From Mizuhopecten yessoensis (Eukaryota), in assembly GCF_002113885.1 (NCBI RefSeq), contig NW_018404676.1:441453-505452 (forward strand): a stretch of DNA of 64,000 nt. Direction: 5' to 3'. A program made the position numbers and the translations under genes. Positions 3,301-63,945 of the stretch are shown here, piece after piece (within the stretch, counting starts at the first letter, position 1; every line of letters begins with the position of its first letter). The notes beneath the pieces were generated by a model. The model searched no databases, had not been told where the DNA came from, and worked only from the letters and a program-made list of their open reading frames with translations.

Positions 3301-4857
3301 GAGAACCAGAAACTGTGCATGCCCTGTTCTTGATTCAAACGGTGCATCCAATGAATGTGATGGAAATCAATACCGTTCTTGGAAGAGTTGCCAAGTAAGA
3401 AAGTCGTTTTCTTCTTTCTATGTTGCGTGAGACGGACATAGGAATGGACTTTACAAAATCAGTTTCCCTCCTCCTCTTCCTTTCTCCATTTAACCATGTA
3501 GTTATTCTTTACTGACGAGGATCACATCTTGTTGGATCAAACGGTATAAAGAATAACATAAAACCAATATCTGATACAATTTGAAGAAGTGACTTAATTT
3601 TGTATTCATACTTCCTTCCATTGGCTCAACGACTACCACATGTTGTTCAGTTTTACTTCTCCCTTATGCCCGCTATATTGTTTTTACGAAAGGATGTTAA
3701 GACAACTCTAATAAATCAATACCTAAATGCTAATAAAACACACGTGACAACATTTCTTGTGCAGGATAAAGTGAATACCCATCAAGCTTAGTATATAAAC
3801 TAATTGTGTAGCTATGATCTATACGGGATTAAGGCTTTACATCAGTAGTTGACTTTCAATTGATTATAGATGAAATTTAAACCTCACAATATTTGACAGC
3901 TCTCCTGGTGATCAGCATATCCAATAATCGGTCATACACATATTCCACTAAGGTTAAAAGATCCACAGGTGTCATAGTATTTATATTGATTGAAAGTGTC
4001 GCTATTAACTCTAGAAGAATGTAGTATCTATTAAACACGACATTGGGCCTTGTCTTACCTTTACTTAATTCTGTCCAATCGATACCATAACCACGGTCCT
4101 ATGCTAGGGATACCGATACCTAGTCCGAGAGATTAACACTGATCCCCCTTACCTGACACGCCTGGTATTCCCGTACCCCCTGTGTATAGTCTGGCCAGGG
4201 TATTACTGTGATACAAATCTCCACTACACCTCAAACGTAGACAATTAGGGCTTTTAAAGTGACATCTTCTACAAAATTCTGACCAACATTATCATCATTT
4301 TGTTCTTGTGATATTGCAACCTATTTGGACGGCTTTATAAGATTAAAGACTGAAAACACCAAAGAATATAGATTGAAAACATATCTAAATATCAAAATTA
4401 TATAGTTGTACATAACATCCATACTTATTTTGGATTTGTTTCCGCAGTACAAAAAAACATCAATCTACTAAAAACCTAATACATGTTTACCATTCTGTCC
4501 TGCATATGGATTATACGTGTTATTCTTGATTTGCGAATCCAAAGCAAAACTTGTACAAAATCATCAGGATTGATTTTGTTATGTACGCACTGTTGACGGA
4601 AGTGTTTAACATTCGTACTGTATCAACCTCGTTTTACAAGTTTGTCCTTGTATGTTGACGCTTGATATGTGTATGTTAATGATTAATTTTATTGTAAAGT
4701 GATTAAACATATATATATGAACTATGTAGGGTCTCATACGGAACAACGTTTGTGTACACCAGTGTTAGAACGTTTGACTACATCCCTTTAATTGTACAAC
4801 GTATCACTCACTTAGACAGCTTGTGATTGAATGATCGATTTCTACGTTCAAGTTACC

Positions 4858-6014: not shown

Positions 6015-6161
6015 ATGAGGCTCCTACGGGAACTTCGTTTATTCCTTCTCCTGATACTCGGTCTTGTGCCTGGGACCGTGGTGGGAACGCTTACCGGGCC
6101 GGAGTTTCTTGGAGGATCCATGAGCTTTGAAGCATTTGATGACCAATCACATAATATCCTG
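6015..6161 (+). CDS. Exon 1: signal peptide plus start of head domain
   Basis: MRLLRELRLFLLLILGLVPGTVVG-TLTGPEFLGGSMSFEAFDDQSHNIL: basic n-region, hydrophobic h-region, probable cleavage near VVG/T. Donor CTG|GTAAGT, phase 0. Confidence 0.85.
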
Positions 6162-12100: not shown

Positions 12101-15100
12101 TCTCATGTATTTAACCAACTAAACTATGCTTTGTAAGGATCGCATTTGAAAAGTTACAGCACGAACAATATTCAACACAATACTGTATATAAGATATTCT
12201 GCTTAGTCCCAACTTGATTATCATTAACCACGCTTTATATATATATTGTTTGTTTCAGATTGGGAATTAACAGAAATTATACATTGAGTGTCCCAACTAT
12301 TGACCAGGATGGGGATTACTTTGAATGCCGTAAAATGGCATTCATCGAGTTTATAGATCTTCAAACAGCCAACAAATTGAAAAATATTGATATACGAAAG
12401 GTAATGTAGTGTTTAATGACACAAGTATAACTTTATATTATGTTTAATCCTGTTCGGGTGGGATGTTGACAATGTTGGTTGTTGTCACCTCAGAGATGCT
12501 CCTGTAGAAAGTACATGTTTATTGATGTGTTCGCAGTATTAAGATACCCATGTCCCATGTTTTAGATATATACTTTATTAAAGATGTGACACGGAAATTC
12601 AATATTCTACCTGTAATATTCACTCACATTAATACATTTCGCACTAATATTCACGCATACAATATCCAAACTATCCACCAGTGCAATAGCCACTGTTGCG
12701 GTATCCAATGGTGTATTAACTTTGCGTGAAATACTCGTAATGCGAAGACAAAGGAGTCAACAGAGCTGTGTCTTTGTGAACCAAGATTATGAAAGCTGTC
12801 TCGCTGTCACATTTGTTTTTTCTAATTTATTATATACTTCCAAATCCTTCCGTTAATGCTTCATATACATATGTTTGAAATCGTGTTTTTTATTTGTGTT
12901 ATTTGGAATGTTGTATCACGGGGCTCAACACTTTTAAGGGACTCATACAATCGATGAATTGACTGACTACAGATTATATCTTGGCCTTTTTAGACCATGG
13001 TTCACTGAGTTGTTTTGCATTACTTATGTCCAACTCATTGGAATTTATATTTTTTGCTTTACAGTTTTTAATAAAACAAACCTCAACAAGCCAAATTTTA
13101 AATTTGGTAATTACATTCACAAGAAATTTGATTAGGAAACATGCTACAGTGAAATCTGTAAAAGAAATTTTTGCTGAGAGATAATGGTGGGTATGTCGAT
13201 TTTATTGCTTTTAGGATTGCTTCATACACATCGACACATCTAGTCCTGAATACCAGGTAGGAGACTCGGCAGTGATAGCAGTGACAATACAGGACTTCAA
13301 CAGAGATAATATCAAACTGGCTGGAGATCCACATCCTTTACGCCAGCGCTACGCTATTGGACGGTCACTTAGTGCCGTCCCTGTGCAGGTAGGCAAGTTC
13401 ATCAGATTTACGTTACGTTACTATTTCCGTTTATCACTTGCTTGTTTTGCAAAAAACAAAAACAAAAACAATAAAAAAAAACAAAAAAACACCGAGGCGA
13501 CCTGTCTAACTACTGATATTTCACGAATATAGCGGAAAACTTCAATATTTCACGAGGGCGTAGTGAATTGTTGTAGATTTTAGCCAAACGAATTAAATAT
13601 AAAAAAGAAACTCGACGGGAAACCATCACAAACACTTCATATTGCGTTTTGGAAATGTTTTAATGAAAAAATACTCCCTTTAACAAACAGCAAGATTGCT
13701 TGAGAATATCAAAATATCTTCATATTGTAGTGCAGGATCTAAATAACGACGTTAAACGGTCAATGATGTCACAATCAAGGTCAATGCCGAACACATACAT
13801 GTCAACCTTTTGATTCGTTTTTATGGCTATTGCATTAGTATTGAGCATCGTAAACATTTGATTGGTTTAAACACATTGCTTAATTATTATTTTTTTATAA
13901 TTTCATACTTCTGTCAGAAATATCACTTTTATTTGATGAAAAAAATCCCGACAGTCAAATATACGGATATATTTGCCAGTTCATGTATCATTCCCAGTTC
14001 ATCACCATACTGATATATTTAACGGTATGATGTATCAGTCTATACCCACATCAATGTGTCGACGAGTAACCTGTTTACTTGTTCAAAGATGTACAAGTTG
14101 CAGTGTACAAATGTGTGAATTTTTGAAAGTCATTCAATAAATGTGTTTATTTCAGTTTTACATAGAGATTGTTCTCAAAGACGATGCACCTGTGATCATC
14201 GATCCGACCCCTCTTGAACAACAGATGTTCACTGTCTTTGTTGGGTCAATATTGAAACTCAAAGTTGTAGCCAAACCCACTAATCCGACCAGGTACATAG
14301 TTCAATACTCAAGTTCAATCAAATGTAAAATAGACATAATTCATTTAGTACATATGGGCTTATAAAGGATGATATGTATTATAATGGTTGTCGTACTCGA
14401 TGACAACAAAATATAGTAACATTTAATGCTACCCATTTGACGTCACTTTTCTGAAAGAGACTATAGCTGTTTTTATGAAATACACTTGTATAGAAAGGAG
14501 AAGATCGACTTTTATGCGTATATGTTGTTAATTAAATCACTGATTTAAATCATTTGTAAGATTATCAAAATGACCCACTGATAATGATTGGGTGAGAGAC
14601 ATGAACTTACTTGTTCACTTAATTGCCAATTAAGCTGTTTGTTTACTCGCATCTACCTTTACATGTTCTAGGACACTATCACACTTTTTCTTCACACGAC
14701 GTGACGGCGTTGTTCCACAAACTTCGGTGGTGACTGACGAAACAGTGATAGATCCACTCGCGAAAAGTCAGTCGGTTCTTTGGACACCTGTAGCCTCTGA
14801 CTTGGGAGATCATATCTTGTGTGTGAGGGTCGAGGACAGTGCTGGGTAATGTAGCAGACATTATCTAAATAACTTAAAGGGGCTGGTATGCCATATTTGC
14901 TAAAATGGCATACACATGTTTAAAATACCTTCTTATGAAATATACCGATTCAAATTTTGCTGAAATTCACTCCCTAAGAGTAAAAAATATAATTATATTA
15001 AAGAAATCCTAAATTGTCACCTGACAGTCTTAACCTCTCAATTGACCCAGATCAGTGATGTAATTTTAACGCATCATCAACAAGGCCACATGTAAACATC

Positions 15101-18100
15101 GCGGCGAAAGAAAAAGATGCATGCAAAAGTCATGACAGGCACGAGGTATCAATACCGTTATATATAACAACAACATAGGTAGGAATACTACACTTGCATC
15201 ATACATGACCTTTGAAAACAATTATTTACGTATAGTATTGCTGTCTTGTCCGCTAGTTGAGTCCGACATGGTATAACAACATATTGCCGTGGTATAACAT
15301 AACGGCGTGCTATTGTTGTTATCTTCACTGCCTCCTTTTCGAAACAACCACGTCACATATATAAATAGATCTGCGCTAAATTTTCGCGGGGCTTCCCCGA
15401 GATTTCAGTTGTCAAAACTGGGTATTGCAAGCAGAACTCGACCATCATATTGCCGTGGTATAACTTTTGGAAGGCCTGAGAACGCATTTAGACCCATTTA
15501 TTTTGTATTTTTTTCCCCGACCAGCCCCTTAAAGCATCCATAATAACTGTTTATAACAAAAACACGTACGTTTTTAAAGCCAATGGAATAAGTCAAAGGC
15601 CAATTATATCTAAACAATAAATAAAAAAACCATGCTATAAAACTATCATTGTTATGATCATGACACATGTACATATAAAGACTCCTATTATTTCTTCAGA
15701 TTCGACGCACTACCACGATGCTTCATCATACGAGTAAAAGGTATGGTTTTAAAAATTCAAGTTTATATGGTTCGTTTAGCTAAGAATCTCAACTATTTGT
15801 GTAAATTTTTTAACTGTACCAATTACTTCTTTGAACCAACCGTATAACGGGATATTTATGCGGGATGAAATGTTCGCGATTTTGACCCAAGTTTAGAAAA
15901 AAAGGTTTACACGGACTATATTTTTGCGATCTAGATATGTTAAGGAAGTACATTTGTGCGGTGTTTTAGCATAGAGACGGGACACTCCGCATTAAAAGAG
16001 TTAAATAGTCAAATGATTAGGCTATATTAACAGTCATAACAACATGCTTGCTATTTCATGACGATAATACGGTGATCCGGTTCACTTGACACGTGTCATA
16101 TTATTCTGCTGATCAAATATTCTTGATCACTTTATTGGCCGGCAAAATAGCGAAAATAGCATCCGGACCATATGATATTACAATGCGCAATTTCAAAATT
16201 CCATCCAATCCGTTTATCGGCTATTCTTAGATGTAAGCATTTCAGTTTTATTTTGCATCTGATGGTACCCATTGTATAAAATAATTAATGCAAACTTGTA
16301 TAAACACTAATGTCTTATAAATAAAATTCAGATCAGAAAAAGAATACAATTTGTAAATCATCTGTCTTTTAGCTGCTCCTGTTGGAGTAGGATCACAGAT
16401 AGTACAGGTAAGATATGATAAAGTACATAGAGGATGCTATACCATTGTATAATAAGTGAATTGGAATACGTTCTTATTAAAATCAAGTGATTCATCCAAA
16501 ATAAACCAAGAATAATTCATAAGTATACATGTAGCGTCAATTGATTGAAACACTCGCATTCATTTGAAATGCTAAACAAAATCTTTCCACAAATGATAAA
16601 CATAAGGTCCATATTATTACAAGGGTTTTCAATTTTTAGATGTCCATATAATATACTGAATGTCAAAACCAAGAATTCTGTAAACACTAGTGGTACCCTC
16701 CACGTGGTCGGTAAATATTTGATGTATCTTGTCTATTTTAAATCAAGGGAAAACCAGCGTTCCTGCGGTTTCCATCTAACGGAGAGATTTCCTGTTTGGT
16801 CGGGTCAAGTTGTCGTTTCCCTATCTACGCTGTTTCCACCTCACCTGGGTACTTACACTGATTTAAATTACCTTAAGTATTAAAATTGGGAAAACTTGTC
16901 ATTTTCTTACCAAGCATGACAAAAGAGAGAAATTAGTCAAGCAACTTTATGCAATGTCAATACGTTTACCGATGAAAACCTTATTGAATACGTCAAATTG
17001 AAAAAATATTTACTTAAAATGCACATTATTTCGCTTCTTTCAGAGGAATTACAGATATATCTCTAACTAGTTCGGAAGCCGCGGGTTGTCATGTTAGTGC
17101 AATCAGAGATGCCAGTGCCATACATATAGGAGCAAAAATGGTTGACATGACATTTCAAGATTCCTCGTTTGGTCGTAAGAAAATTTGTTTAAGAGCAGCA
17201 GATGCGTAAGTATTCAATTCACATTGTATAATTTATGTCTTATATCGGTGAAGCTTTCTGATGGATTTGTTATGTTATATTTGTACTTGTCACGTCCTTT
17301 TTCTATCACCTGTCAAGTATACCTCATGTTTAAAGACAATGCCATTTAAGGTTTCCTGTCGTCTGTATTTATTAGTCGTGATGTCTTTGAAAAAGAAAGC
17401 ATGTCGTACAGAAAATTTCAATAATTTTTTAAACGCTACATTTTTTGCCCACCTGGTCTTAAAGACCATAGTGAGCTTTTGCTATACCGCGTCGTCCTTT
17501 GCCCGTTCGTCCGTCAACTTTTCCTTTAAAACGCTACTATTCCTGAACAGCGTTATAGATTTTGACTAAATTTGGCATGGAGCATCCTTGGGCAAAGGGA
17601 CTAAATTTTGTGTAAACGGAGGGTGTGGCCATTTTGTTGCAGATGGGCATGGCCAAATAGTGAATTTTGAGGTTTAAATCTTCAAAATCCTTCTTCTTCT
17701 GTGCCTTTTCAGGGATTTTATCCAAATTTGGTACAGAGAATTCTTGGGCAAAGACGACTAAATTTTGTATAAACGGCGGGTGTGGCCCCTTTGGGTGCAG
17801 AGGGTAGGGGCTCAAAAGGGGTATTTGAGGTTTAAATCTTCAAAATCCTTCTATTTCTGAACAATTTAAGCGATTTTAACCAAATTTGGCCTGGAGCATC
17901 CTTCGATAGAGGGACTGCATATTGTGCAAACAGTGGTTGTGGCCTTCTTGGGTGCAGAGGGGTTGCGCTCAAAAGGGATATTTGAGGTTTAAATATTTTA
18001 AATCCTTCTCCTTTTGTACCATTTGAGAGATGTTATCAAAATTCAGCCAGGAGCGTCTTTGAGCAAAGGGGGCTGAATTTTGTATGAACGGAGGGTGCGC

Positions 18101-21100
18101 CCTCTTGGTGCATAGAGGCAGGGTCCAATAGAAAAGTTTGAGATTTAAATCTTTAAAATCCCTCTTCTACTGTACCATTGGAGGATTTATAACCAAATTT
18201 GGTCTAGAGCATCCTTTTGCAAAGGGAAGTGATATTTTGTAAATAAAGGGTGTGGCCCCCTGGGTGCAGAGGGGCGGGCCCAATATGAACTTTAAAATCG
18301 TTCTTTTTATGTACCTTTTGAGGGATTTTAATCAAATTTGGTCCAGAGCATCCTTGGGAAAGTGACTCAATTTGTTTTAAGGTAGAGTGTGCCCACACTG
18401 CGGGCAGAGGTGTTTGATTTGAGGGATTTAAAACAAATTTGGTGTAGAGAATCCTTGGGCAAAAAGGACTCAATTATGTATAAATAGAAGGGTGGTTTCA
18501 GGGGGCAGAGTGGCGAGCCCAATAGGGAAACTTGAGATTAATGTTTGAAATTCCACCCCAATTCATGGGGGCAGAAAGAAGGGATCTTCGTGTCATGTTA
18601 ATGAAAAACCATAAAATCGGTTTTCATCTTTTTAATGGTGAAACACGTATTCTATCGAATGCAGTCATTTTCCTGAAACATTACCCATTCTGCTTTATTT
18701 CTTACCTTTCAGCAATTCTGTAATTATGAAATGTTTTGAGGCAGTGGTACAACCAAAGGGTACGTAACAGATTATATATGCATAAGCAATTTTGTTGTCT
18801 GTGAATGAATGTAACAAAATGTTATCTTATTTGACAATCGATCTGTGTTTTAAGCCTGTTTCCTAAACATTTGCTGTTTTATTGAACTTGCATTGACCAA
18901 CCATAAATATCCATACGTGTGATGTTTCTGGAATATGTATATCATAAATTTATCACATTTATAGAATTGATACAACTGAAATTTTCCGGAACATGTTTTT
19001 CAAACAGAAACTTTTACATTTTTCTTTATTCATAATTACGTGTCAAAATTTTATTTACTAGATCCATGTGAAGTACAACCCTGTCGAAATAGTGCTGAGT
19101 GTGTTACGAACGGTGACAGAACATCATATGTTTGCATATGTCCCCCGGGGTATACGGGCATCGCCTGTGATATAGGTACTTTCTATACAATCACCTGGTC
19201 AAAGGCCACGTGAGATTATTCCGTTGCTTGACGTTCTTCGTCTGTTGTGTTTCGTAGTGTTGGTGTGTCTATTCTTTAACAATTGCAGAAGAAATGCTTT
19301 TGGGAGCTTTTTTGGTAGCTTTTTTTTAATATGCATGAGTACTAACGCCTCTATATTCCTTTCAAAAAAGATTAATGTATTTAGTTTGAAGGGAATTGCT
19401 ACGCCAGTTTGTCCATTTAATTGAAAATGCTCACCATTCTACATTTAGGTGTCATGTGTACGACAACCAGAGACAGATTTCATCAAAAGATAGGAATCTT
19501 TTGAGAATGTACAGTCAGCTAATCATCAATTACAATGGGGTCAAAAGGCAGAAGACATTGATAGGCCGCAATAACATTTTCTTGACCCGTTTGCGTAACA
19601 TCTAGGAATATCATATTATCAACATTTACCTGACGACAGAATAGTGGAATTGAATATAGAAGACGTCATTTTCGGGGCTTAATCTTTAGAATTTTATCCT
19701 ATTCAACCACTTTCCAGAGTCTAGGGGGATCTGATGTGCAAACCACTTTGCAATCGTTTAAATCAATCTTCCGAATTTTGTTTGATGTTACCAAGATACT
19801 ATCATGTATTTGACAAGACAGGCATACAACATTGATAAACAAAACGCCCGCCCCTCTGAAGCACCTGGCTGCATCTGATTATTGTACATGTTACATGATA
19901 TCTACAATTTGTTCGAGTTGATGTATTTCTTTGTGACTACAGGAATTATTATTTTGTGTCCATGCTTTGTTATACTTGATATATATATTCTAAGTATATT
20001 TCACATGGAGAGCTTGACTCAAGTTGATAAAACCACTATATTAAACGACTACAAATCGTGTCAAGAGTGATTGAATGGATTTATAGCATGCCTGTTTCTG
20101 ATGTTTGTTTTGCTTCAATGTATTAAAACCGAAACAATTAAAGCAAAATTAAGTGAGCAGTGTTTTCAAAACACCACATAAACTATTAGGCCATCGTACC
20201 ACTTTCACTTTGGACTTTGATGCTCCATACATCATACTTTGCTGCTGAGAGTATAAATATAACACACTGATGGTAAGGATTAACTCATTTTATTCTGTAT
20301 TTCAGCTCCTGATAAATGCAATCCTAACCCTTGTAAATTTGGAGGCATTTGTATTCCTCATGGAATTCAGGTCGAGTGCCGGTGTACGAGTGGATTCTTT
20401 GGCACATATTGTGAAAATGGTATGTATTCACAAGCTACAAAATGAAGTTTTAAATTAGTCGCGTTGTCGTGGTTTGCTATTAATGATGCTTTACTAAGTT
20501 TTAATACATAATTATAATGCATCTCATCTTACGTAGCTATGGATACGTTTCTACATGACCCGTGTTTGTTCCATGTTTTATATGACTTAACTGTGGCTAT
20601 GTTTGTCTCCCTGATCCGTCTGTAGTTTAGTTGTTATATAACGTAGCCGTTAATGCCTATCACCCTGACACGTCTGTAGTAAATGAATCAGATAGCGTAG
20701 CTGTTGATACGTATAACACCGAAATGTATATTCTCACCTGTATGTGGAACCTGTCTTATGTTGTGTTACCTCTATGTAGCTTTGATTGTGTGTATCAAAG
20801 AGCTGTGAAAAGTAGATTTTTATATTAATGTAGCTTTAGAAACGTGTAGCATTGCATAACTGGATGAGTGCATATTTCTGACCTGTATGCAGAACGTGTT
20901 TTATATTAAATATGTGTATCCCAGACCAATATGTAGTTTGTACTTAGCTGTGGATGGGTGGACATCCTGTAGTATGTGTGTGTGTTTTAAATGTTTTAAA
21001 ATATGTATATCACATAGCCGTGGATAAGTGCAGACCTGACCCTTGCGGTAAACATGGAGTATGTGAAGAAACACCAACTGGATACACGTGTCATTGTCAG

Positions 21101-57100: not shown

Positions 57101-60100
57101 TTATAATCTCTGCTGCATCATTTATTTGCTGTTGATGTTGTTATTTGGAGTGTTTTCTTTGTTAAGGCATCTGTATATTAAATTCCCGTTGTGAAATAGA
57201 ACGCTAATTATGTTGTGATGTAAGGTAGTTACATAACAATATATTGTATAAATTCAATAGAAATGTGGACGAGATGTGCTTTATCGTGGATGCCAAATCG
57301 CCGCCTGCTGGTGAGTAGATTTAGACATAGTATTATTTTCATTCATTGTGAAAATAACTGACGAACAATGTACCTACCTTAAATGTAAACTGGAAAAATA
57401 GGTTATCACTAGGAAACATCGATCGACAATGTGTATTGTGTGTTTTGGTCTCATATCTGGTATATTTGTCTCTTGTGAAGTCGTTTTGCAGACTTTCAAA
57501 GTAGTTAAAAAACGTCTAAGCTGTTACGAAAATCAATATATAGCTAAATTCAAACCGATGAGTTCCGGAAAAAAGCAGCAAAACAGTCTTTGTTTCATGA
57601 ATCTTTATTTACTGTACATTTAAAAAATAAAAAGACATCATGTTTATTTGATCATATATGTATACTTGTATATTTTAGGGATAACGACACATCCTGATAT
57701 TACAAAGGTAATTATAGCTGTACAATGTGTTTCGTGAGGATCATACGATTTAACTTTGAATAACATGTATTTAACGAAAACAAACATAGCAATTAGGGTG
57801 TACATTTGTTATACCGCAGCCTGAAAAATGATATAAAAAGAATCAATGCTTGTATATTTTTACATCAAGAAATTGAAATTATACACTAATTCAGAAACAA
57901 ATAAAAGTGTTTTTCCGTATTATTTCACAGCCGCAATTTTCATCTCCATCGCTACCGGACAATTCTGTTGTGGAATGTAAGGCTGGTGCTACATGTCATA
58001 TTCACCTTTCGACAAATCCTGGAGGTTCAGGAAACAACTGGTAAATATTCGGCAGGATTCATAACATCTCATTCTGTGCAAGTTATAGTGTTTGCGCATT
58101 CTGTTGTTTTATATTGTATCGTCTGCAAGCAAGATTTTTCAAGTTTATTAGTTTAAACTGTATTTATTTCTGGTAATATACAATACATTATATTTTTGAT
58201 ATATATAATCAACAACGAATCGGAAACAAGTACTAGGTACCTATACAATGTCCGTTTCGTTAGGTTAGATATACGATACTGACAGCAGATATAGTAATCA
58301 TTAAATCATATTGAAATAATTAAGTTCTAATGCACATACTTAAAATAATTTCGTAGAATGGCAGAAATATAAAGTATATTAGTTCATTTAATGTGGTTGT
58401 ACAAGGTATGACCAAACTCTTCACATTTTACTGATATAATATTCAAACAATTTGTCATTTTAGATTGAGAAACGATCATTCATTTCATTTTATCGAGAAA
58501 TGTTGTGTTCCACCAAGACATGATGCAAATTTAAATGGAAAAAACAACAGGTCAACTTCGACCGCTACTGTGTATGTGCTTACTACATAGCATTTCTGAT
58601 TAAATTATATGCCCCGTTTAAGCATAGGCACGATGCGCAACTATTTTTATAACTACAACGGGACACGTGTAATGGAGACACCGGTTTAGAGAGTTCTGTA
58701 CCTTTCAGTGTGGAGTTAAAAAAAAAGGGCATAAACAGTAGCTTTTCCAGATTGCAACAAATGACTGCATACTTTGTGGTGTTTAATCAATTTATCGTAT
58801 CATTGTAGTCCTGATATAGTGCAAACCGTCAACGGACAGATGCATAATGTCCACGTATTCAAGACAACCCAAGCTGTCAGTGTAACAAACCCTGTATGTC
58901 AATCTACTGTAACCCTTGCGCCAACCAATAGTCAGATAGGAGACCAACATATCTGTTTGAAACCAACAACAAGCAGGTACAAACACTTTTTTGTCTTTCC
59001 CATTATATTTCAGTGTCTTTGATATCGGTGTATTGAGTCCTGAATTCGTGGTATGTTAATTTTGTGCTGTCACTATTATATTATGTTCATCGATATTTAT
59101 AGACACATCTCTGTTGTATATCACATTTGTTTCTGTCTTACATTAAAAACTGAAATATTCATGCATAAATAAAAGTATAGAGAGGAATAATTATTGCCAA
59201 AATAACACTTCTAAAAAATAACACTGAAACGTGTTTATTGAATAAGATCAATTCATTTTCAGTAAACAAGGCAAAAGCAAATGTTTTACTATCAAGGTGA
59301 CAGACCCAAACAATGGTGCATCAACAGGTAAGTGATGTCGTTATATGTGACACATATTTATAAACTACAAAAGTAAGATTCCATAAACAGTAATCGGACC
59401 TGTCAAATACCCAAGGAATTCTGGTTTGAAATTACTATTAACTTTTCATATTACGCAAAAAAACAACAAAAAACCCCCAAAAAACATGACATTACTTTAG
59501 AACACATGTGAACAAATTAGAATAAAAGTAAGTTACACGTTTGAAATAATGTTTTATTTCACTTGATTACCCGTCTTCATCACTTTATACGTTTTGAATA
59601 TTAGGGGGGCCATGTCAGTCTACCCATTGTCATAACGGAGGAACATGCGAGATTGACTTCACAAGATCCACGCCTACAGCAAAATGTGTTTGTACGGCTG
59701 GCTTCCAAGGGCCGACCTGTGATGCTGGTATGATGTCGATTTCTCATATACACACTTACAATCATATCCTTATCGCTCCCATTTGTTATTACCACAATCT
59801 TCATTATCAATAAAATCGTTTTTTTTAACAGGAATTGCCTGCGGTAGCACGAACTGTCAAAATGGTGGAGTATGTGTCGTACAAAATAGCCAACCTGTTT
59901 GTGTGTGTCCTCCAGGAAAAATCGGAACACTATGCGCCAATGGTATTATTGTTATACAATTAATGGATGTCTGTAACATTTAATTATCAGATTCGCGTAA
60001 TTATTTTATGAAGCTTTTTTATTATTTTTATAAAAAATGTTAAAATGAGCTTAAATGTTTGTTTACCATTGCAGACGGATCAACCCCTATTGCGGGATCC

Positions 60101-63100
60101 CCTTCGGTACCCTCGGTATGTGTAATACTTGCCAAATTACCTTATTAATTATTTCCTGAATTCTTCCATAATGTGTAGTGTCTGGTGTCATAATATGTAG
60201 TTTCTGGTGTCATAATGTGTTGTGTCTGGTGTCAAATTAAATATTCTTTAACCAACAACTCTCATGTTCGAAGATACAGATTTACTGACGTCGGTCACAT
60301 CTTGTGTTGTGAATTAACCATACATTTGGTTATTTAGTTTGTTTATTTATTTATTTACAGGGGGTCCCCATTTTTGTTGATACAGCGTTACTGAAATCAA
60401 TCACTTGTGTTATCAATCAACCGTGTGCTATACCGCTTCCTGTTACAGGTTCTGCCATCACACCGTAAGTACGGGTACATTATCAAGGTCTCGAACTACT
60501 TTATAGTATGTGATTTAGACAATTAGCAATCTTTCTTTATTCGACTAATGAAGAAAATAAACTGTTAAAACTATTTCTGTAATCGGATATATCTTTTTCA
60601 TTATTCTGTATTTCTACAAGAAATACAAATTGATTGGAGCTTTAGCATTCAAAGAAACACTTTTATCCGTCTGACGAAAGAGACGTTGCTCATTTTGAGT
60701 TAAACTGATTTCAATGATATACCTGATATTACGAACATTTTAAACGTTTGATAACCTTCATCTTCTGTCATATATTTTGGTAGTTATATAAAAATAATAA
60801 AGTATAATCTGAAAGGTAATCAAACATAGCGTGTATATCTATAGCTATTCAAAGTTGATTTTTATCCGATTTTAACAACATTGACTAAGCAGACGACAAC
60901 TGATGAAATTATCATTATTAGATTTAAATGTCATATTTCAGTGTGTCTAAATTTTGCTTGTCAACTGTCTGTTCAATACAGATTTTTTTTTGTCACAGAT
61001 CTGATTTGCAGTTTGGTCAAGTTGACACTGGTATCTCAACGGGACCAATATCTGTTGGCCAGACACTCGGTAATCAAAACATGGCAAGCTTCGTGGTCAC
61101 TCCGACAATGTCAGGAAAAAAACATGTCTGCATGCAAACAAAGACGACAACATCGTAAGTACAGCACAATCGCAACAAAATCTAATCACCGTTTCTAATA
61201 CTTTATACCTCGTATTGAAAGGATGATCATATTTGTAAATATTCGAATTAAAAATATATAGATATAAATGCAGGTGGTGTCTTTGACCTCAATTTTGTTA
61301 TCAATTTGTTGGTGACAACCTACTAAAAACATCGCTACTATTTATCAATCTTAGTTCAAGCCATCGAAAATGCTTAAAAAATCCTGTTAAAATATGTAGG
61401 TGGCGACTATTGGTGAATGGCCTAAATAATATTTAGTGCAATATTTTTCCTTTTTTCTATTTATTATTTTTATCAAAAAAAAAAAAGAACAACAACAACA
61501 ACAACAATGATGAATGGCTCGGTGCCAAGCACCATATATACGATATAGAGCAAAAAAAAATTATATATACATATAATAATAAATTCAACAACCACATGCA
61601 TTCTAACTACTCACAAACTAACAAAAAAAAGGAATGCTAATGAATTATAATAATTGTAATAATAAGACAAAGTGAAGAGCCAAACCTGAGTACAAAAAAC
61701 AAAAACAAAAACAAAAATGTTTTAAGTTTAAACAAATTTATTTCAGGTTGTAAAACCAAAAGAAATTAAATTTTAAGAACATTTTACAAAATAAAGTTCA
61801 AGAAAAGTATGAGAGACATCGTTTGTATTGAAAGACAAAATGTATGAGAGACATCATCTGTATTGTGAAAAGTTGTAGAAAATTATTTAAGCTGTACGTC
61901 TAAATGAAAAGAAAAGTATGAGAGACAACATCTGTACCATGTACTCTAGTGCTTCTTAACAGTTTGTTCTGAAAACATGTATAGAACATGTGGTGATCAT
62001 ATAAACTTGTTAGTACAATGTTGTAATTCATCTTAAGGTTGTTCTTAAACGGTTACAAATTTCACTTATGTTTCATTGATGTTTAATCTATTTATTGAAG
62101 TTTTGTATTCATTTTTTCTCAATATGAATGTTAATAATAAAATTATAATTAAACAAAAAAACAACAAAAAAAACCCATTTTTTTTTAATGCAATAACGCC
62201 ACTATAATCCTGATATCTTACCTGAGTTAAAACTGTCAATTTTTTTTTCTCTATCTTTTCTTTCCTTTTTTATATTAACATATTTGTGACGAAACTTGTT
62301 GTTATATAGTGTCAGTAAAGTTATATGACAGGATAAAATGTGCCGGGGACTTGTCTGGTACACCGTACCTATGTGTTATACGTATATTTGTAGTATGAAT
62401 TTTGCGTTAAGCACACGCACGGTAATCGATAATTAGCTACCTCAAAATTGTTTAGTCCTAATCAATCAAACAATCGTTGGATGCTTTAAATTACACACAT
62501 AAAAACATACTCTTCAACATTGTAACAACGTATATACATTGTAGAAATGTAGATGAGGTGTGCGTGGAAGTGAATGCTGTATCGCCTCCCTCGTTGGGTA
62601 AGTCTGATAAGTTGATTCCATGTAAACATATTTAAGACATAAATATTATCTTGTATCGTTTTTGGGTAACCTATGTTTATCATAATATGGTGTTGTGTAC
62701 ATTCAAATATCTTTGTCAATGTTTTTATTTCAATTTGTTAATGTTATTTTATAAATGAAATTTGGAAGAAAATTAGATTATTACTGGCGCTAGGTAAAAA
62801 CAAAAAAACGTCCTTGATCCAACACATCACTGCACAAACTATCTCTGTCTTTATCTATAATATAGGTAGTCTTCCGCCGGGCCCAAGTTCCAGTAAGGTA
62901 TGTACTATAAAATTAACAGTCTATAGCCTACATTATTATTCACTGATATATTTAACTCTTTTATATTCAGGAATAAACTTGCTGCTCGAATGTTTTTCAT
63001 GATTTCTATTTTCTTGATTTATTTGATAGCCCCAGTTTACGTCGCCGTCTATACCGGACAATTCTATTGTTGAATGCAAAGCCGGATCTACGTGTTACAT

Positions 63101-63945
63101 CCACCTGAAAACAACCCCTGGGACCACTGTCAATACTTGGTAATTACAAATAGTCACGTAACCAAAGTATATTTTGTATATAGTGCTGTTACAAAAAGGA
63201 AATATTTCAGCGATACCGCTAAGTCATTGCATAAAGGTGAAAATACAATAAATGTATTACAAATTTCATTTGCGCTCCAGCAAAATTATATTCAAGAAAA
63301 CAAAATGCTGTTTACCAAAGAGTGTCCCAATAGGTGCATTTTATTTCCTTTCTTGAACCTTTTACACCTTTTCTTTTTGCACGTCAATCATTAACTCATT
63401 TTCTAATGAGATACTTTTTTTGCAAGCGAATAACTGATTTCATACCTAACGTCTATCCTTTCGCCTACTAAATGACTGCAAAGAGGACTCTATCTTGTCG
63501 CCCTTCTATTAACTTATTTCCTTCTTAATGACTTTCTCTCGGCGTGTAAATAAATTATTCCTTTCTAACTTGGTAACTACATGTACTTAGTCTGGTATTC
63601 ATTTGTTAAGGGAACGTTTTTAGACTTTGTGTATATATGTATTTGTTTGAAACAAATGAAAATATGGAAATACAAATCGATTGTTCGACGTCGCATTATT
63701 GCATTTTGAAGGCGACCGTAACACGTTAGATGTTAAAAATAATACACCAGTATTGATTTACAAGGTTTTTTTTCCAGTCCTGATGTCATTCAAACAAATG
63801 GGGTGAATCGCATGCAGAATCTCGTGGTGATTCCCTCCAGTAGTGGTGGCTCTTCATCGTCTACCTGTTCATCGACAGTCGCAATTAAACCTACAAATAG
63901 CCAGCACGGAAATCATCATGTGTGCTTGTCACCCACACAGCTAAG
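6015..63945 (+). CDS. Giant secreted multidomain protein (Sib/integrin-beta-like head + tandem three-exon Cys modules + EGF repeats); 79 coding exons in window, 3' end outside
   Basis: Exons read by eye with matching phases: 6015-6161, 10208-10527 (donor reads TT), 11889-12032, 12259-12400, 13215-13388, 14156-14292, 14672-14845, 15700-15740, 16373-16407, 16748-16848, 17044-17205, 18713-18759, 19062-19175, 20306-20419, 21018-21128, 21282-21338, 22124-22225, 22767-22792, 23555-23670, 23913-24092, 24401-24453, 24748-24788, 25736-25842, 26639-26782, 27134-27186, 27324-27431, 28336-28452, 28826-28863, 29061-29158, 30191-30352, 30665-30708, 30844-30866, 31162-31277, 31885-32055, 32880-32932, 33351-33464, 33843-33892, 34099-34205, 35719-35886, 36084-36136, 36994-37019, 37129-37235, 37946-38104, 38703-38749, 39494-39598, 39975-40107, 41744-41908, 44769-44815, 45110-45132, 45554-45666, 46263-46409, 47019-47071, 47433-47552, 47909-47964 (uncertain linker), 48696-48808, 50016-50192, 50438-50522, 50884-50981, 52960-53118, 53500-53537, 53822-53935, 54570-54680, 55133-55173, 56532-56635, 56785-56946, 57261-57310, 57679-57707, 57931-58040, 58809-58976, 59263-59327, 59605-59727, 59832-59942, 60075-60115, 60361-60464, 60999-61154, 62545-62597, 62866-62897, 63030-63139, 63778-63945. 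Sum about 8,087 nt, frame open throughout. Confidence 0.88.
7345..9312. repeat. 25-bp minisatellite, about 78 copies, in intron 1
   Basis: Unit CACATACGGAATCAGAAAGTCCTTA repeated head-to-tail with point variants and no unique spacers. Confidence 0.97.
10208..13388 (+). CDS. Exons 2-5: N-terminal head domain (Sib/'integrin beta-like' family-like)
   Basis: Translation has TGWRLGKGQCGSTC, VVAVN..WE, FEGLSW, QRSDTNRRNRSP, SVPTIDQDGDYFECR, IAVTIQDF, LSAVPVQ|F. The motif order matches my recollection of the HFRGG...RSD..N.SP...D.DGD..CR...IEDF...VP.QF family. Not database-verified. Confidence 0.7.
10481..10980 (+). repeat. 5 x 100-bp tandem repeat spanning the exon-2 3' end and its splice donor
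   Basis: Units start at 10481, 10581, 10681, 10781 and 10881 (GAAGTTACAATAA...AAATTAATTA). Confidence 0.97.
11419..11822. mobile_element. Non-autonomous hAT-like MITE
   Basis: Imperfect TIRs TAGGGTCGTCAA / TTGACAATCCTA, subterminal GTAACCGGTTA motif at both ends, and an 8-bp flanking duplication ATACATAT / ATACCTAT (7 of 8 match). Confidence 0.7.
14156..18759 (+). CDS. Modules 0 and 1 of the three-exon Cys repeat, with linker exon 16373-16407
   Basis: APVIIDPTP...WTPVASDLGDHILCVRVEDSAG|FDALPRCFIIRV and GKPAF..EISCLVGSSCRFP|...GRKKICLRA|..MKCFEAVV. Exon phases 0-2, 2-2, 2-1. Confidence 0.82.
14878..15529. mobile_element. Kolobok-like non-autonomous DNA transposon
   Basis: TTAA-AGGGGCTGGT at the left end and ACCAGCCCCT-TAA at the right end: a short TIR in a TTAA context. 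Confidence 0.5.
17441..18560 (+). mobile_element. Helentron/HINE-like non-autonomous element carrying a ~155-160-bp internal tandem repeat; 3' end not seen
   Basis: Start TTTTTTGCCCACCTGG...GTGAGC...CGTCCGTC, then about 6-7 diverged copies of TTCAAAATCCTTC...CCAAATTTGG..GAGCATCCTTGGGCAAAGGG...GGCCCC. Confidence 0.75.
19062..22225 (+). CDS. EGF-like domains 1-4 (phase 1-1 exons) plus a 19-aa two-Cys exon (21282-21338)
   Basis: DPCEVQPCRNSAEC..CICPPGYTGIAC; DKCNPNPCKFGGIC..CRCTSGFFGTYC; DKCRPDPCGKHGVC..CHCQDGYSGNSC; CGAQCVAPNGIC..CLCSKGFTGPDC. Confidence 0.93.
22767..28452 (+). CDS. Super-repeat 1: linker, module 2 (4-Cys), linker, module 3 (6-Cys type), EGF5, EGF6
   Basis: PIFVPPTPEAEDLIKC..C|..LHVCLQV|..TKCFNVEY; FVDPTLPDQSEIVCEIGKPCH..C|..KKICLKS|..VRCFYL; CASSPCKNGGVC; CPPTVPPHCNNGGYC. 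Confidence 0.88.
23000..23122 (+). pseudogene. Decayed duplicate (pseudo-exon) of exon 23555-23670
   Basis: tttatag|ctgatatgtgtttaacaaacgcccgaagctgaagatttgatgaaatgtgaacaaaattaatac vs tttatag|ccgatatttgttccaccaacacccgaagctgaagatttgataaagtgtgagcaaaattcatac. Two in-frame TAA stops and no donor. Confidence 0.85.
27567..28252 (+). mobile_element. Complete Helentron/HINE-like non-autonomous element
   Basis: 5' TTTTTAGCTCACCTG with GTCC microsatellite; 3' CAGGTGAGC (inverted copy of GCTCACCTG) followed by hairpin AGGCCC-TTT-GGGCCT and CTTGTTT; sits in a T run. Confidence 0.8.
28826..33464 (+). CDS. Super-repeat 2: linker, module 4 (4-Cys), linker, module 5 (6-Cys), EGF7
   Basis: AKFKDGTIPKEVKCYVGQPCQIP|..GKHQICIQ|..DEICFMV; YFIDPSLPDGSSVECKTGKACH..C|..GPCKVDV..GICF|..VRCYDV; CSSTLCENGAFC..CACLSGFSGPLC. 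Confidence 0.88.
32330..32790 (-). mobile_element. Possible heavily decayed Penelope-like retroelement remnant
   Basis: Minus strand gives scraps resembling PP..SYSYSKP...NYK....C.C.S, which I recall from the pre-RT region of mollusc Penelope-like elements. Heavily interrupted. Confidence 0.3.
33843..39598 (+). CDS. Super-repeat 3: linker, module 6 (4-Cys), linker, module 7 (6-Cys), EGF8
   Basis: STFGDLAVPKEIKCTLHQECEVP|..GNKKVCVH|..DDICFNV; PHFIEPTVQPQSTLQCEPGRICH..C|..GSCAVDV..TLCF|..HRCFKV; CTGITCHNGGVC..CVCPIDRSGPNC. Confidence 0.88.
34833..35426. mobile_element. Foldback/MITE-like element with long imperfect inverted repeats
   Basis: About 34905-34966 (TATACATTCCTTAGGGTTATGCCATCATGATATGAAATGAAATTTAGGTCAAC..) is the reverse complement of about 35337-35398; outer GGTGCCAAT / ATTGGCACC. 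Confidence 0.7.
37306..37828 (+). mobile_element. Older Helentron/HINE-like copy, same family as 27567-28252
   Basis: TTTAGCTGACCT start, GTGAGCGATACAGG..GGGCCTTTTGT end, shared internal motifs (CGACTTCTT, TTTGACC). Confidence 0.65.
39975..47552 (+). CDS. Super-repeat 4: fused linker + module 8 (4-Cys), linker, module 9 (6-Cys), EGF9
   Basis: PKFTDMALPTDVKCEINTECVIP|..GNKTVCVQ|..DEHCFTV; PHFKIPTLPDGSTVSCDINKACH..C|..GECRTDV..HICL|..KRCYNL; CESQNCQHGGLC..CSCAAGYSGTDC. Confidence 0.88.
41441..41482. repeat. (TCAA)n imperfect microsatellite
   Basis: ttcaatcaatcaattaattgatcaatcgatcaatcaatcaat. Confidence 0.7.
42078..42797 (-). CDS. Nested antisense B-box type 2 + coiled-coil (TRIM-like, RING-less) protein, 239 aa, single coding exon
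   Basis: CKPHGIKAVFACMQCKDTLCCEDCVVTTHQCH is a B-box2 zinc finger, followed by a ~140-aa heptad-rich region and the PTFTAG...LREAFGTI linker. A polypyrimidine tract plus AG (minus strand, 42800-42830) lies 2 nt before the ATG, so the 18 upstream ORF codons are intronic. Confidence 0.88.
   Translation of the reverse strand: MACALQTDGQLENDPKNDLVCKPHGIKAVFACMQCKDTLCCEDCVVTTHQCHPFKKLSVLMAEKRASIENYITLLEQTKLPLLKEQMKATENQLARNEIDAKEARKAVLERSTKLKSELDKVINKSVRKCEEMAFENESKLTVYKEHMENILTEYRQKLSQVQHVIDEGTVEEIIHTTKNLPQPPVYPQYPDLHLPTFTAGDPSHLREAFGTIVISTSEETTDESNNTPTVVREIEELD
43951..44330. repeat. ~170-180-bp direct duplication upstream of the nested TRIM-like gene
   Basis: 43951-44128 and 44164-44330 share ACACATATCCTTACATAA..TTACCTGA..GTCGCCTTTAAAGTCCGGATTCGTATCTGAATAGTGAG. 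Confidence 0.9.
47909..54680 (+). CDS. Super-repeat 5: linker (uncertain), module 10 (4-Cys, last exon fused to linker), module 11 (6-Cys), EGF10, EGF11
   Basis: VTDTVVPDTISCVVNTVCHVP|..GSHTSCVQ|..TVCFNV; IVEPTLPDGSVVKCSKGKSCH..C|..GTCVTDI..HICFQ|..SRCYDL; CITLPCPTTGTC; CASKTCNNGGVC. Confidence 0.85.
50941..51272 (+). repeat. About 5.7 x 58-bp tandem repeat spanning an exon 3' end and its splice donor
   Basis: Unit TGTCATATCCTCATCCATACTGCTCCTAAAGGATCACAGTG|GTACGTAACACTACTGT starting at 50941, 50999, 51057, 51115, 51173 and 51231. Confidence 0.95.
51922..52843 (+). mobile_element. Helentron/HINE-like element of a second family, with internal tandem repeats
   Basis: 5' GATGGTGGGCT..GTCC-type microsatellite, repeated GATC(A/G)GATAAAC..ATGGCC units, 3' GGTGGGCGCC plus hairpin AAGATCCC-TCT-GGGATCT and CTTGTTT. 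Confidence 0.72.
55133..59942 (+). CDS. Super-repeat 6: linker, module 12 (4-Cys), linker, module 13 (6-Cys), EGF12, EGF13
   Basis: PRFVDTVLPKRISCTVGEECKIQ|..GDKRVCLQ|NVDEMCFIV; PQFSSPSLPDNSVVECKAGATCH..C|..PVCQSTV..HICL|..SKCFTI; CQSTHCHNGGTC; CGSTNCQNGGVC. Confidence 0.88.
55223..55944. mobile_element. Non-autonomous DNA transposon with ~60-bp TIRs and a 6-bp TSD (IS3EU-like)
   Basis: GAAATG|TATGGCAAGCCAACTTAACATTTATTCAAGGAGCAATG(T)CGATCCTGTATTTCAAAAAA ... TTTTTTGAAATACAGGATCG(G)CATTGCTCCTTGAATAAATGTTAAGTTGGCTTGCCATA|GAAATG; internal ATAAGATATCTTAT repeats. Confidence 0.85.
60075..63945 (+). CDS. Super-repeat 7 (incomplete): linker, module 14 (4-Cys), linker, first two exons of module 15 (6-Cys)
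   Basis: PIFVDTALLKSITCVINQPCAIP|..GKKHVCMQ|NVDEVCVEV; PQFTSPSIPDNSIVECKAGSTCY..C|..STCSSTV..HVCL. Donor at 63945/63946, so the gene continues past the window. Confidence 0.87.

What the first reader, a model, noticed from the sequence alone, without database searches (positions are those of the whole stretch)
14156..63945. Apparently unnamed ~100-aa three-exon module, 16 copies in two alternating subtypes
Seen: every copy uses exon a (P-x-F-x-[D/P]-x-x-x-P..C-x5-C, normally phase 0-2), exon b (..V..TP...G-x-[H/K]-x-[I/V]-C-[L/V/F], phase 2-2) and exon c (..[R/K/E]-x-C-[F/Y]-x-[V/I/L], normally phase 2-1). Type P (F-x-D-x-x-x-P..C-x5-C-x-[I/V]P) has 4 Cys. Type Q (F-x-x-P-[T/S]-x-P-D-x-S..C-x-x-G-x-x-C-H) has 6 Cys. 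From module 2 on the two types strictly alternate, implying an obligate two-domain unit. Modules 0-3 are the irregular ones (2, 5, 4 and 7 Cys). Inference: alternating hydrophobic residues suggest an Ig/cadherin-like beta-sandwich with extra disulfides.
Basis: partly seen in the sequence, partly recalled or inferred. Interest (0 to 1): 0.75.

Follow-up and report, generated by a model that had tools for sequence, protein, structure and literature searches.

The report
Unnamed paired Ig-like domains, bivalve giant protein
The repeated three-exon module is real: it encodes two sister types of small disulfide-braced Ig-like domains that alternate, with EGF domains between the pairs, along the stalk of a giant membrane protein so far seen only in bivalves, and the domain has no entry in Pfam.

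Summary
On the + strand, 13 modules (25736-63945) are clear. Each has exon a (phase 0-2), b (2-2) and c (2-1). Spliced contigs from two runs confirm ten GT..AG junctions. HMMs built from other bivalves' proteins hit 27 plus-strand exon pieces and none on the minus strand. Modules 0-2 are much weaker copies.

P has 4 Cys and Q has 6; the extra junction Cys is a codon split across the a/b intron. P and Q separate on trees (100/99 for 37 natural modules; 91/87 and 97/95 for the window's exons a and b).
- The true repeat is EGF(1-2)-linker-P-linker-Q.
- A 29-nt linker exon sits between P and Q in the one unit checked.

No Pfam family matches. Relatives were found only in bivalves, under automatic names ("notch-like", "mucin-2-like"). 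Every match in this genome lies in this one gene, which ends in a transmembrane helix.

Disulfide pairs and the P-Q interface could not be checked because model coordinates are not exposed. The scan's notes hold nothing similar on other DNA.

The parts
14156..14846 (+). Module 0 (degenerate, P-like position): exon a 14156-14299, exon b 14634-14846; exon c not located
   Evidence: tblastn of the Ylistrum model P0003 gives 84% and 69% identity. Not hit by independent module HMMs at i-E<0.05. No Pfam hit.
16748..17205 (+). Module 1 (diverged, Q-like): exon a 16748-16848, exon b 17044-17205; exon c not located
   Evidence: AG/GT sites and phases. Clusters with other copies in BLAST. Falls on the Q side of both exon trees, on a long branch. 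The a/b junction codon is GGA, not Cys.
19040..22314 (+). Four EGF-like exons (about 19040-19186, 20284-20442, 20954-21151, 22123-22314 as open pieces)
   Evidence: EGF Cys pattern in the translations. Exon ends not determined.
23555..24452 (+). Module 2 (degenerate, P-like position): exon a about 23555-23670 (C-x9-C), exon b 23887-24093, exon c 24402-24452
   Evidence: tblastn of P0003 gives 62% and 88% identity. The c-exon HMM gives E 0.002-0.004. The a exon is read from the sequence only.
25736..27186 (+). Module 3 (Q, extra Cys): exon a 25736-25842, exon b about 26657-26782, exon c 27134-27186
   Evidence: Independent Q HMM: exon a i-E 1.8e-8, exon b i-E 0.017. Exon c core DVRCFYL. Exon a ends in TG.
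27281..28445 (+). Two EGF exons (27281-27433, 28335-28445)
   Evidence: tblastn of P0003 gives 72% and 81% identity.
29061..30708 (+). Module 4 (P): a 29061-29158, b 30191-30352, c 30665-30708
   Evidence: Splice sites and phases. P HMM hits at 3e-9, 1e-12 and 0.01.
31162..32932 (+). Module 5 (Q): a 31162-31277, b 31885-32055, c 32880-32932
   Evidence: Junction codon TGT = Cys. Q HMM hits at 1e-11 and 9e-7.
33350..33466 (+). EGF exon
   Evidence: tblastn of P0003 gives 82% identity.
34099..36136 (+). Module 6 (P): a 34099-34205, b 35719-35886, c 36084-36136
37129..38749 (+). Module 7 (Q): a 37129-37235, b 37946-38104, c 38703-38749
   Evidence: Junction codon TGT.
39493..39597 (+). EGF exon
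   Evidence: tblastn of P0003 gives 83% identity.
40016..44815 (+). Module 8 (P): a 40016-40107, b 41744-41908, c 44769-44815
45554..47071 (+). Module 9 (Q): a 45554-45666, b 46263-46409, c 47019-47071
   Evidence: Junction codon TGC.
47432..47551 (+). EGF exon
   Evidence: tblastn of P0002 gives 83% identity.
48696..50478 (+). Module 10 (P): a 48696-48808, b 50016-50192, c 50438-50478
50884..53546 (+). Module 11 (Q): a 50884-50981, b 52960-53118, c 53500-53546
   Evidence: Exon a bounds corrected (acceptor 50884, donor after 50981, last letters TG). Exon b starts with C..
53824..54673 (+). Two EGF exons (53824-53940, 54569-54673)
   Evidence: tblastn of P0001 and P0002 gives 82-88% identity.
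56532..57310 (+). Module 12 (P): a 56532-56635, b 56785-56946, c 57261-57310
   Evidence: GT..AG joints 56635>56785 and 56946>57261 in contigs of runs X1 and X2. Joint 57310>57679 in X2 only.
57679..57707 (+). 29-nt linker exon between P-c and Q-a (phase 1 to 0)
   Evidence: Joints 57309>57678 (cut +1; X2 only) and 57705>57929 (cut +2; X1 and X2).
57931..59327 (+). Module 13 (Q): a 57931-58040, b 58809-58976, c 59263-59327
   Evidence: Joints 58039>58808 (+1), 58973>59260 (+3) and 59325>59603 (+2) in X1 and X2. Junction codon TGT.
59605..59942 (+). Two EGF exons (59605-59727, 59832-59942), followed by a Pro/Ser-rich linker exon starting at 60075
   Evidence: Joints 59726>59831 (+1) and 59941>60074 (+1) in X1 and X2.
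60361..62597 (+). Module 14 (P): a 60361-60464 (contig pieces lie on 60363-60464), b 60999-61154, c 62545-62597
   Evidence: Joint 60464>60999. The loose end after 61154 reads into the c exon..
63030..63945 (+). Module 15 (Q): a 63030-63139, b 63778-63945; exon c lies beyond the window
   Evidence: Junction codon TGT. The gene continues downstream.

Best explanation
The stretch is most of one transcribed gene of about 73 kb. It encodes a giant type I membrane protein so far seen only in bivalves.

Protein layout: a signal peptide (window about 6015-6167) and a head of about 310 residues come first. The ectodomain after that is a long stalk of repeated units, EGF(1-2) - Pro/Ser linker - P - short linker - Q.

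The module: P and Q are sister families of one ancestral domain of about 100-110 residues. Each is an Ig-like beta-sandwich of 7-8 strands, encoded by three exons with fixed phases.
- P carries four invariant Cys.
- Q carries the same four plus a Q-specific pair. One Cys of that pair is a codon split by the a/b intron.
- The P-Q duplication predates the split of the bivalve lineages sampled. The whole EGF-P-Q unit was then multiplied.

Shown here: the exons and splicing, the two types and their alternation, the fold class, the absence of a Pfam match, the restriction of detected relatives to bivalves, that every match in this genome lies in this one gene, and the C-terminal transmembrane helix.

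Inferred only: P and Q pack into a fixed two-domain unit (pTM 0.78 and linker pLDDT about 85 are the only support). The disulfide-braced P-Q pairs and EGF spacers make a stiff, protease-resistant rod that holds the head tens of nanometres from the cell surface, for adhesion or ligand recognition.
For: Exon families and phases.

Splicing: ten GT..AG joints in contigs of two runs from two studies.

Control: 27 hits on the + strand against 0 on the - strand, using HMMs built from other species.

Conservation: collinear 62-89% identity to Ylistrum and Pecten gene models.

Relatives:
- Only 23 hits at E<=1e-3 among 1.84 billion representatives.
- 12 of those 23 also match whole-module HMMs.
- The 9 of those 12 that carry a source name are all bivalve: Pecten, Ylistrum, Saccostrea, Crassostrea, Solemya, Mactra, Sinanodonta. 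P0013 was not looked up, and P0012 and P0019 carry no name.

P/Q split: support 100/99 on 37 natural modules; 91/87 and 97/95 on the window's exons.

Alternation and Cys patterns.

No Pfam match.

One gene: all 23 genome matches lie at C1349:467182-516064.

Gene end: one more P-Q unit, a lone P, then a last exon with a juxtamembrane Cys motif, a transmembrane helix and a basic tail. The same tail motif occurs in oyster P0026 and Solemya P0009, and a helix is predicted at residues 529-549 of P0026.
Against: - Modules 0-2 are not recognised by the independent HMMs.
- No two-domain template matches the P-Q arrangement (TM about 0.3; rmsd 10-29 A in all 40 rows shown for whole-model alignments).
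- The oyster replicate, built on a 7-row alignment, was poor (pLDDT 58.9, pTM 0.45).
- The interface and disulfides were not inspected.
- Two raw RNA-seq runs of the same species label had no reads on the exons, so expression is restricted or low. The runs that show splicing are labelled RNA only by guess.
- The function is inference from architecture alone.
- The taxonomic range rests on a profile of one exon. The two later word-based searches were blank or found only the query, and such blanks mean little.
Confidence: 0.72

Rival explanations
1. P and Q are not a new family. They are very diverged members of an existing cadherin-like or bacterial-Ig-like family (the He_PIG / Big_9 / Cadherin_5 / dystroglycan-type group, or HYR) that Pfam's HMMs simply fail to reach.
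For: - ESM Atlas feature search on P0002 422-650 lists clusters with He_PIG, Big_9 and Cadherin_5 at 0.87-0.88.
- The exon-b profile also pulled in a bacterial repeat protein, P0007, which carries Big_3 and Y_Y_Y; six further hits matched the exon-b profile only and were not scanned against Pfam.
- Module 0 ends in a motif (LWTPVASDLGDHILCVRVEDSAG) that looks like the F-G strands of such domains. That resemblance is recalled, not tested.
Against: - No member of this group appears at E<=10 in six contiguous P-Q pairs or 15 exon pieces, nor at E<=0.01 in five whole proteins.
- Atlas scores under 0.9 are leads only, by the tool's own note.
- The four invariant Cys and the C-x5-C hairpin are not features I know from those families (recalled).
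- The P-Q linker has no acidic Ca-binding motifs (read from the sequences).
Confidence: 0.2
2. The P-Q pair is a diverged zona pellucida module: ZP-N with 4 Cys plus ZP-C with 4-6 Cys, two Ig-like halves. Here it would be multiplied and would act as a polymerisation unit.
For: - It is a two-domain Ig-like unit with 4+6 Cys, next to EGF domains, in a membrane-anchored molluscan protein.
- The Atlas structure search's first row is a ZP/ZP-N cluster (TM 0.40 over residues 535-650).
- Molluscs have EGF+ZP shell-matrix proteins (PMC9290575, outline and abstract read).
Against: - No Zona_pellucida or ZP-N Pfam hit at E<=10.
- No ZP chain appears in the 50 rows shown by either VIA search.
- TM 0.40 is below the usual same-fold line.
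- P and Q are clear sequence homologues of each other. ZP-N and ZP-C are not, as far as I recall.
- The Cys spacing (C-x5-C, about 58 residues, about 13 residues) differs from ZP-N as I recall it.
- The unit is repeated about 8 times, not single and C-terminal.
Confidence: 0.04
3. The array is a decaying or mis-assembled repeat (a pseudogene or an assembly artefact), not a working gene.
For: - Tandem DNA repeats sit in and beside exons, for example 58 bp x 5.7 copies at 50941-51270.
- Two raw RNA runs show no reads on the exons.
- The deposited gene models of relatives are fragmentary.
Against: - All 28 checked exon a and b pieces are open, with AG/GT sites in the conserved phase (exon a of module 11 after the correction).
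- The copies are only 10-42% identical to each other, so they are old and maintained.
- The invariant Cys are kept.
- Spliced contigs exist in two runs.
- The exons are collinear with orthologues in two other scallop genera.
Confidence: 0.03

Closest known systems
Cadherin EC repeats and cadherin-like (dystroglycan-type / He_PIG) domains
   Different: No Pfam match. There are 4 or 6 invariant Cys. No acidic Ca-binding linker motifs are seen in the sequences. Two alternating subtypes are interleaved with EGF.
I-set / filamin-type Ig domains (titin, filamin, FGFR)
   Different: Sequence identity is 8-17%. No Ig-family Pfam hit. The Cys pattern is C-x5-C near the first hairpin plus two Cys in the last two strands. 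The relative orientation of the pair is not matched (TM about 0.3).
Zona pellucida module (ZP-N + ZP-C), including molluscan EGF+ZP shell-matrix proteins (PMC9290575, outline and abstract read)
   Same: Two Ig-like halves with 4 + 4-6 Cys acting as one unit, next to EGF domains, in membrane-anchored molluscan proteins.
   Different: No Pfam ZP hit at E<=10. The halves here are plain sequence homologues of each other. The unit is repeated about 8 times. The Cys spacing is different (recalled).
HYR (hyalin repeat) domains flanked by EGF, as in SVEP1 and hyalin (recalled, not tested beyond Pfam)
   Same: An Ig-like module of about 80-100 residues next to EGF, ending in a C-x-[FY]-x-V strand. One oyster relative is automatically named 'SVEP1-like'.
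   Different: No HYR hit in any Pfam scan. The N-terminal half and the Cys number differ.

Membership tests
   - 10 single exons at E<=10: only 3 chance-level hits.
- 5 whole relatives at E<=0.01: EGF families only, plus sub-threshold Y_Y_Y and FLAD1_M in P0005.
- 21 members of A4 at E<=10: 5 single unrelated hits.
Cadherin / cadherin-like (He_PIG, Cadherin_5, Big_9) | Sequence match to the family HMM | tested here: not met
   No such family at E<=10 in six P-Q pairs.
Cadherin / cadherin-like (He_PIG, Cadherin_5, Big_9) | Seven-strand Greek-key beta-sandwich superposable on EC domains | tested here: inconclusive
Classical cadherin | Acidic Ca-binding motifs at the inter-domain linkers | tested here: not met
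   The P-Q and EGF-P linkers are Pro/Ser/Thr-rich, with no acidic cluster. Read from the sequences. The motif definition is recalled.
Zona pellucida module | Match to the Zona_pellucida or ZP-N HMMs | tested here: not met
   None at E<=10. The only sign is an Atlas structural lead at TM 0.40.
Zona pellucida module | C1-C4 / C2-C3 disulfide connectivity in the N half | not testable with these tools
   Model coordinates are not exposed, and no co-loss of Cys is informative.
Ig-like (E-set) beta-sandwich fold class | Two-sheet sandwich of 7-8 strands, predicted with confidence and matched to solved Ig-like domains | tested here: met
EGF-like domain (the spacers, not the module) | Pfam EGF at or above the gathering score | tested here: met
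   PF00008 scores 31-72 bits in P0002, P0003, P0005 and P0009 against a cut-off of 21.5; P0001 falls just short at 20.7 bits.

The most novel reading that the evidence does not exclude
P-Q is a previously undescribed, bivalve-born obligate tandem of two co-evolved Ig-like domains with its own disulfide architecture. On this reading it works as a unit: a self-associating or ligand-binding 'double domain', comparable in logic to ZP-N/ZP-C. The single-copy giant protein that carries it, with a conserved small-residue-rich transmembrane helix and a juxtamembrane Cys motif, would be a lineage-specific adhesion or recognition receptor of bivalves.
Probability: 0.2. Interest if true: 0.55.

Novelty: new variant of a known kind. 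Interest (0 to 1): 0.4.

Why it matters
These bivalve proteins reach the databases under misleading automatic names taken from their EGF domains: 'notch homolog', 'mucin-2-like', 'SVEP1-like', 'delta-like'. About two thirds of their length has no domain annotation.

Defining P and Q as one or two domain families would correct those names. It would also give a marker for a gene that appears to be bivalve-specific and was found in protobranchs, scallops, oysters, unionids and clams. It adds a clean example of how a two-domain unit, with intron phases preserved, is amplified into a long stalk.

It is not a new fold or a new mechanism. The fold is the common Ig-like sandwich.

Tried and rejected
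Attempts that gave nothing:
- Pfam on single exons gave nothing usable.
- The search for homologous proteins with P0002 found only P0002 and P0001, because EGF words fill the 8000-candidate limit. With the P-Q profile A4 it found nothing among proteins of 126-400 residues. With P0009 region 568-787 it found only the query. These blanks say little.
- Profile A4 against PDB sequences gave only E 0.047 (TRI-1) and 1.8 (TMED9), taken as chance.
- Alignment A3 placed short exon fragments on the wrong half of the pair. I dropped it and remade it as A4 with 21 of the 32 rows.
- The second AF2 job (oyster P0026, 7-row alignment A5) was too poor to search with (pLDDT 58.9).
- Co-loss of Cys as a route to disulfide pairing failed, because the four core Cys are invariant.
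- Two paper searches found nothing on this protein: one on bivalve, EGF and Ig-like terms and one on six accession or locus names. Supplements are closed, so proteome or expression tables that might list these accessions could not be seen.
- Only one paper was opened: PMC9290575, outline and abstract.

Rejected readings:
- ZP module, classical cadherin and pseudogene: see the rival explanations.
- The bird 'AHNAK2' hit P0004 and the ten other hits that matched only the exon-b profile are treated as unrelated repeat proteins; only P0007 and P0008 among them were scanned, and P0007 carries bacterial families.
Full report
WHAT IS THERE

The window is AT-rich eukaryotic DNA (33-37% GC over the finding).

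All-vs-all BLAST of stop-free translated pieces finds four repeated exon families, all on the + strand:
- an EGF family;
- family a, which holds P-x-F, then C-x5-C;
- family b, which holds G-x-[HK]-x-[IV]-C;
- family c, which holds C-[FY]-x-[VIL].

Splice-site scans give these phases:
- exon a has its acceptor in phase 0 and its donor after two extra bases;
- exon b is phase 2-2;
- exon c is phase 2-1.

My first bounds for exon a of module 11 were wrong. They are corrected to 50884-50981. The copies are old: 10-30% identity among b exons and 15-42% among a exons.

IS IT MORE THAN CHANCE, AND IS IT EXPRESSED

HMMs for P and Q built only from other species' proteins hit 27 plus-strand pieces at i-E<0.01 and none on the minus strand. 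The better-scoring type alternates P, Q, P, Q from 29061 to 63030, with module 3 (25739) scored as Q.

Gene models from two other scallop genera map collinearly at 62-89% identity. They are P0003 and P0001 from Ylistrum balloti and P0002 from Pecten maximus.

I laid four runs on 56450-62449. Contigs of X1 and X2 (two studies, labelled RNA by guess) skip the introns with GT..AG ends exactly at the predicted borders of P-a/b/c, Q-a/b/c, two EGF exons and the next P-a/b. The two raw RNA-seq runs (X18, X23) had reads only on an intronic repeat at 58148-58196. Expression is therefore not general.

- A 29-nt exon (57679-57707) links P-c (phase 1) to Q-a (phase 0). This explains how '2-1' and '0-2' exons can follow each other.
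- Another linker exon starts at 60075, before the next P.

THE TWO TYPES

In the window, P exons carry 2+1+1 Cys. Q exons carry 2, then one Cys made by a TG|Y codon split across the a/b intron, then 2+1.
- The split codon is seen in modules 5, 7, 9, 11, 13 and 15.
- Module 3's exon a also ends in TG.
- The six P junction codons are not Cys.

In 89 unique near-complete modules of natural bivalve proteins, the pattern is CC..CC in 44 of 44 P and CCCCCC in 42 of 45 Q.

Trees separate the types:
- A maximum-likelihood tree of 37 natural modules puts 19 P and 18 Q on either side of one branch (100/99). One truncated row was left out, and the Q-specific two-residue insert columns were removed.
- The window's own exons split the same way when treated separately: exon a at 91/87 and exon b at 97/95.

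THE REAL REPEAT

EGF exons lie between every Q and the next P. In natural proteins the architecture reads (e)PQ(e)PQ and so on.
- P is followed by Q within 40 residues in 45 of 45 cases.
- Q is followed by P after 40 or more residues in 42 of 44 cases.

Some of these proteins are overlapping models from one oyster species, so the counts are not fully independent.

Downstream of the window the gene goes on with an EGF exon, one more P-Q unit, two further EGF exons and a lone P. A last exon encodes a Cys-containing juxtamembrane piece, a transmembrane helix rich in Gly, Ala and Ser, and a short basic tail. The pair is therefore the rule, but the membrane-proximal P stands alone.

MODULES 0-3

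Module 3 is a clear Q with extra Cys.

Module 1 joins the family in window-internal BLAST and sits on the Q side of both exon trees, on a long branch.

Modules 0 and 2 are supported only by position, by collinearity with P0003 and by a weak c-exon hit. None of modules 0-2 reaches i-E<0.05 with the independent HMMs.

I therefore count 13 clear and 3 degenerate copies.

WHAT IS IT

Pfam-A gives nothing for the module in any form. Only EGF families are found in the whole relatives. P0005 also has two sub-threshold hits, one of them to the Ig-like Y_Y_Y domain (16.8 bits against 26.6).

An exon-b profile searched against 1.84 billion representative proteins finds only 23 at E<=1e-3.
- Twelve of them also match whole-module HMMs.
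- Nine of those twelve carry a source name, and all nine are bivalve: scallops, oysters, Solemya, Mactra and Sinanodonta. Their names are automatic ones driven by EGF.
- Of the other three, P0013 was not looked up, and P0012 and P0019 carry no name.

In this genome all 23 matches of the P-Q profile lie in this one gene. That count is a lower bound by the tool's own note.

FOLD

Instead I folded a contiguous P-Q pair from the Pecten model (P0002 residues 422-650). This pair is the orthologue of window modules 12-13. The alignment had 21 rows: five other natural pairs plus window exons as fragments (A4).

AlphaFold2 gives mean pLDDT 87 and pTM 0.78, with two all-beta domains of 7-8 strands and a linker at pLDDT about 85.

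Structure searches give the following:
- Foldseek against the PDB returns tandem Ig pairs (PTP-delta, titin) at E about 4e-8, but with TM about 0.3, so the mutual orientation is not matched.
- These values are tied with many other Ig-like domains.

The ESM Atlas gives leads to He_PIG, Big_9 and Cadherin_5 (0.87-0.88) and a ZP/ZP-N structural row at TM 0.40. All are below the tool's own trust line.

A second model of an oyster fragment, on a 7-row alignment, was poor (pLDDT 58.9). It shows the same strand pattern and a C-terminal helix.

Which Cys pair with which, and whether P and Q touch, I could not test, because no coordinates or PAE are given to scripts.

HOW IT MOST LIKELY WORKS (INFERENCE)

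This is a type I membrane protein. Its N-terminal head is carried on a long stalk of disulfide-braced Ig-like pairs and EGF spacers, joined by short Pro/Ser/Thr linkers. The architecture is that of adhesion or recognition receptors. The high pTM suggests that P-Q is a fixed two-domain brick.

The transmembrane and juxtamembrane motif is conserved from Solemya to oysters and scallops. That argues that membrane anchoring, and perhaps helix-helix association, matters. No experiment or expression pattern supports a particular ligand or tissue.

COMPARISON AND NOVELTY

The module works like any Ig-like or cadherin-like spacer domain. It failed every sequence membership test I could run. It lacks cadherin-type acidic linkers, and its Cys spacing is unlike ZP-N or HYR as I recall them.

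I file it as a new sequence family, in two sister types, within a known fold and a known kind of protein architecture. It is a new variant of a known kind and not categorically new.

Two literature searches found nothing on it. Supplements could not be read. The scan's notes hold nothing similar on other DNA. Two notes on the same window concern the head domain and another tandem array that multiplies a splice donor.

LIMITS

- The taxonomic range rests on one exon profile.
- SMART, InterPro and HHsearch were not available.

Noticed in passing
window 50941-51270: A 58-bp tandem repeat (5.7 copies, 93% matches) starts inside exon a of Q module 11. It copies the last roughly 41 bases of the exon, its splice donor (CAGTG|GTACGT) and 17 intron bases. 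Several extra donor-like sites therefore follow the real one. 58 is not a multiple of 3, so using a later copy would shift the frame.
   Followed up: partly
window 57679-57707 and from 60075: Small linker exons: 29 nt between P-c and Q-a, and a Pro/Ser-rich exon between EGF and P-a. They are seen only through spliced contigs. Equivalent exons in the other units were not mapped.
   Followed up: partly
L002 5731-6021 (G000:C1349:520731-521021): The last exon encodes a juxtamembrane motif (K-M-G-R-x-x-C-x-C), a Gly/Ala/Ser-rich transmembrane helix (AAGIGAGSVSGAIAIATIIY) and a basic tail. The same motif is in oyster P0026 and Solemya P0009, so it is conserved across bivalves.
   Followed up: partly
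L001 9639-9755: The Ylistrum model P0001 (residues 1010-1048) matches this exon in a frame that reads as non-EGF text. The neighbouring frame reads as a normal EGF domain. The deposited model probably carries a frame error there. It also lacks exon b of the last P, which this genome has (L002 909-1052).
   Followed up: no
window 219-3347: Open frames with reverse-transcriptase/integrase-like text on both strands, upstream of the gene. This is a retroelement remnant.
   Followed up: no
window 7234-9370; 17540-18540; 58148-58196: Intronic repeats. The first is a long satellite that is open in several frames, the second a roughly 1-kb array readable on both strands. The third is a short element that is the only place where the two raw RNA-seq runs laid reads, with loose ends on both sides. 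It is therefore a dispersed repeat and not expression of this gene.
   Followed up: no
window 6015-6167 and 10208-13418: Signal-peptide exon and head-domain exons of the same gene, collinear with P0003 residues 1-321 at 66-89% identity. Pfam finds nothing in the head of P0003 either.
   Followed up: no
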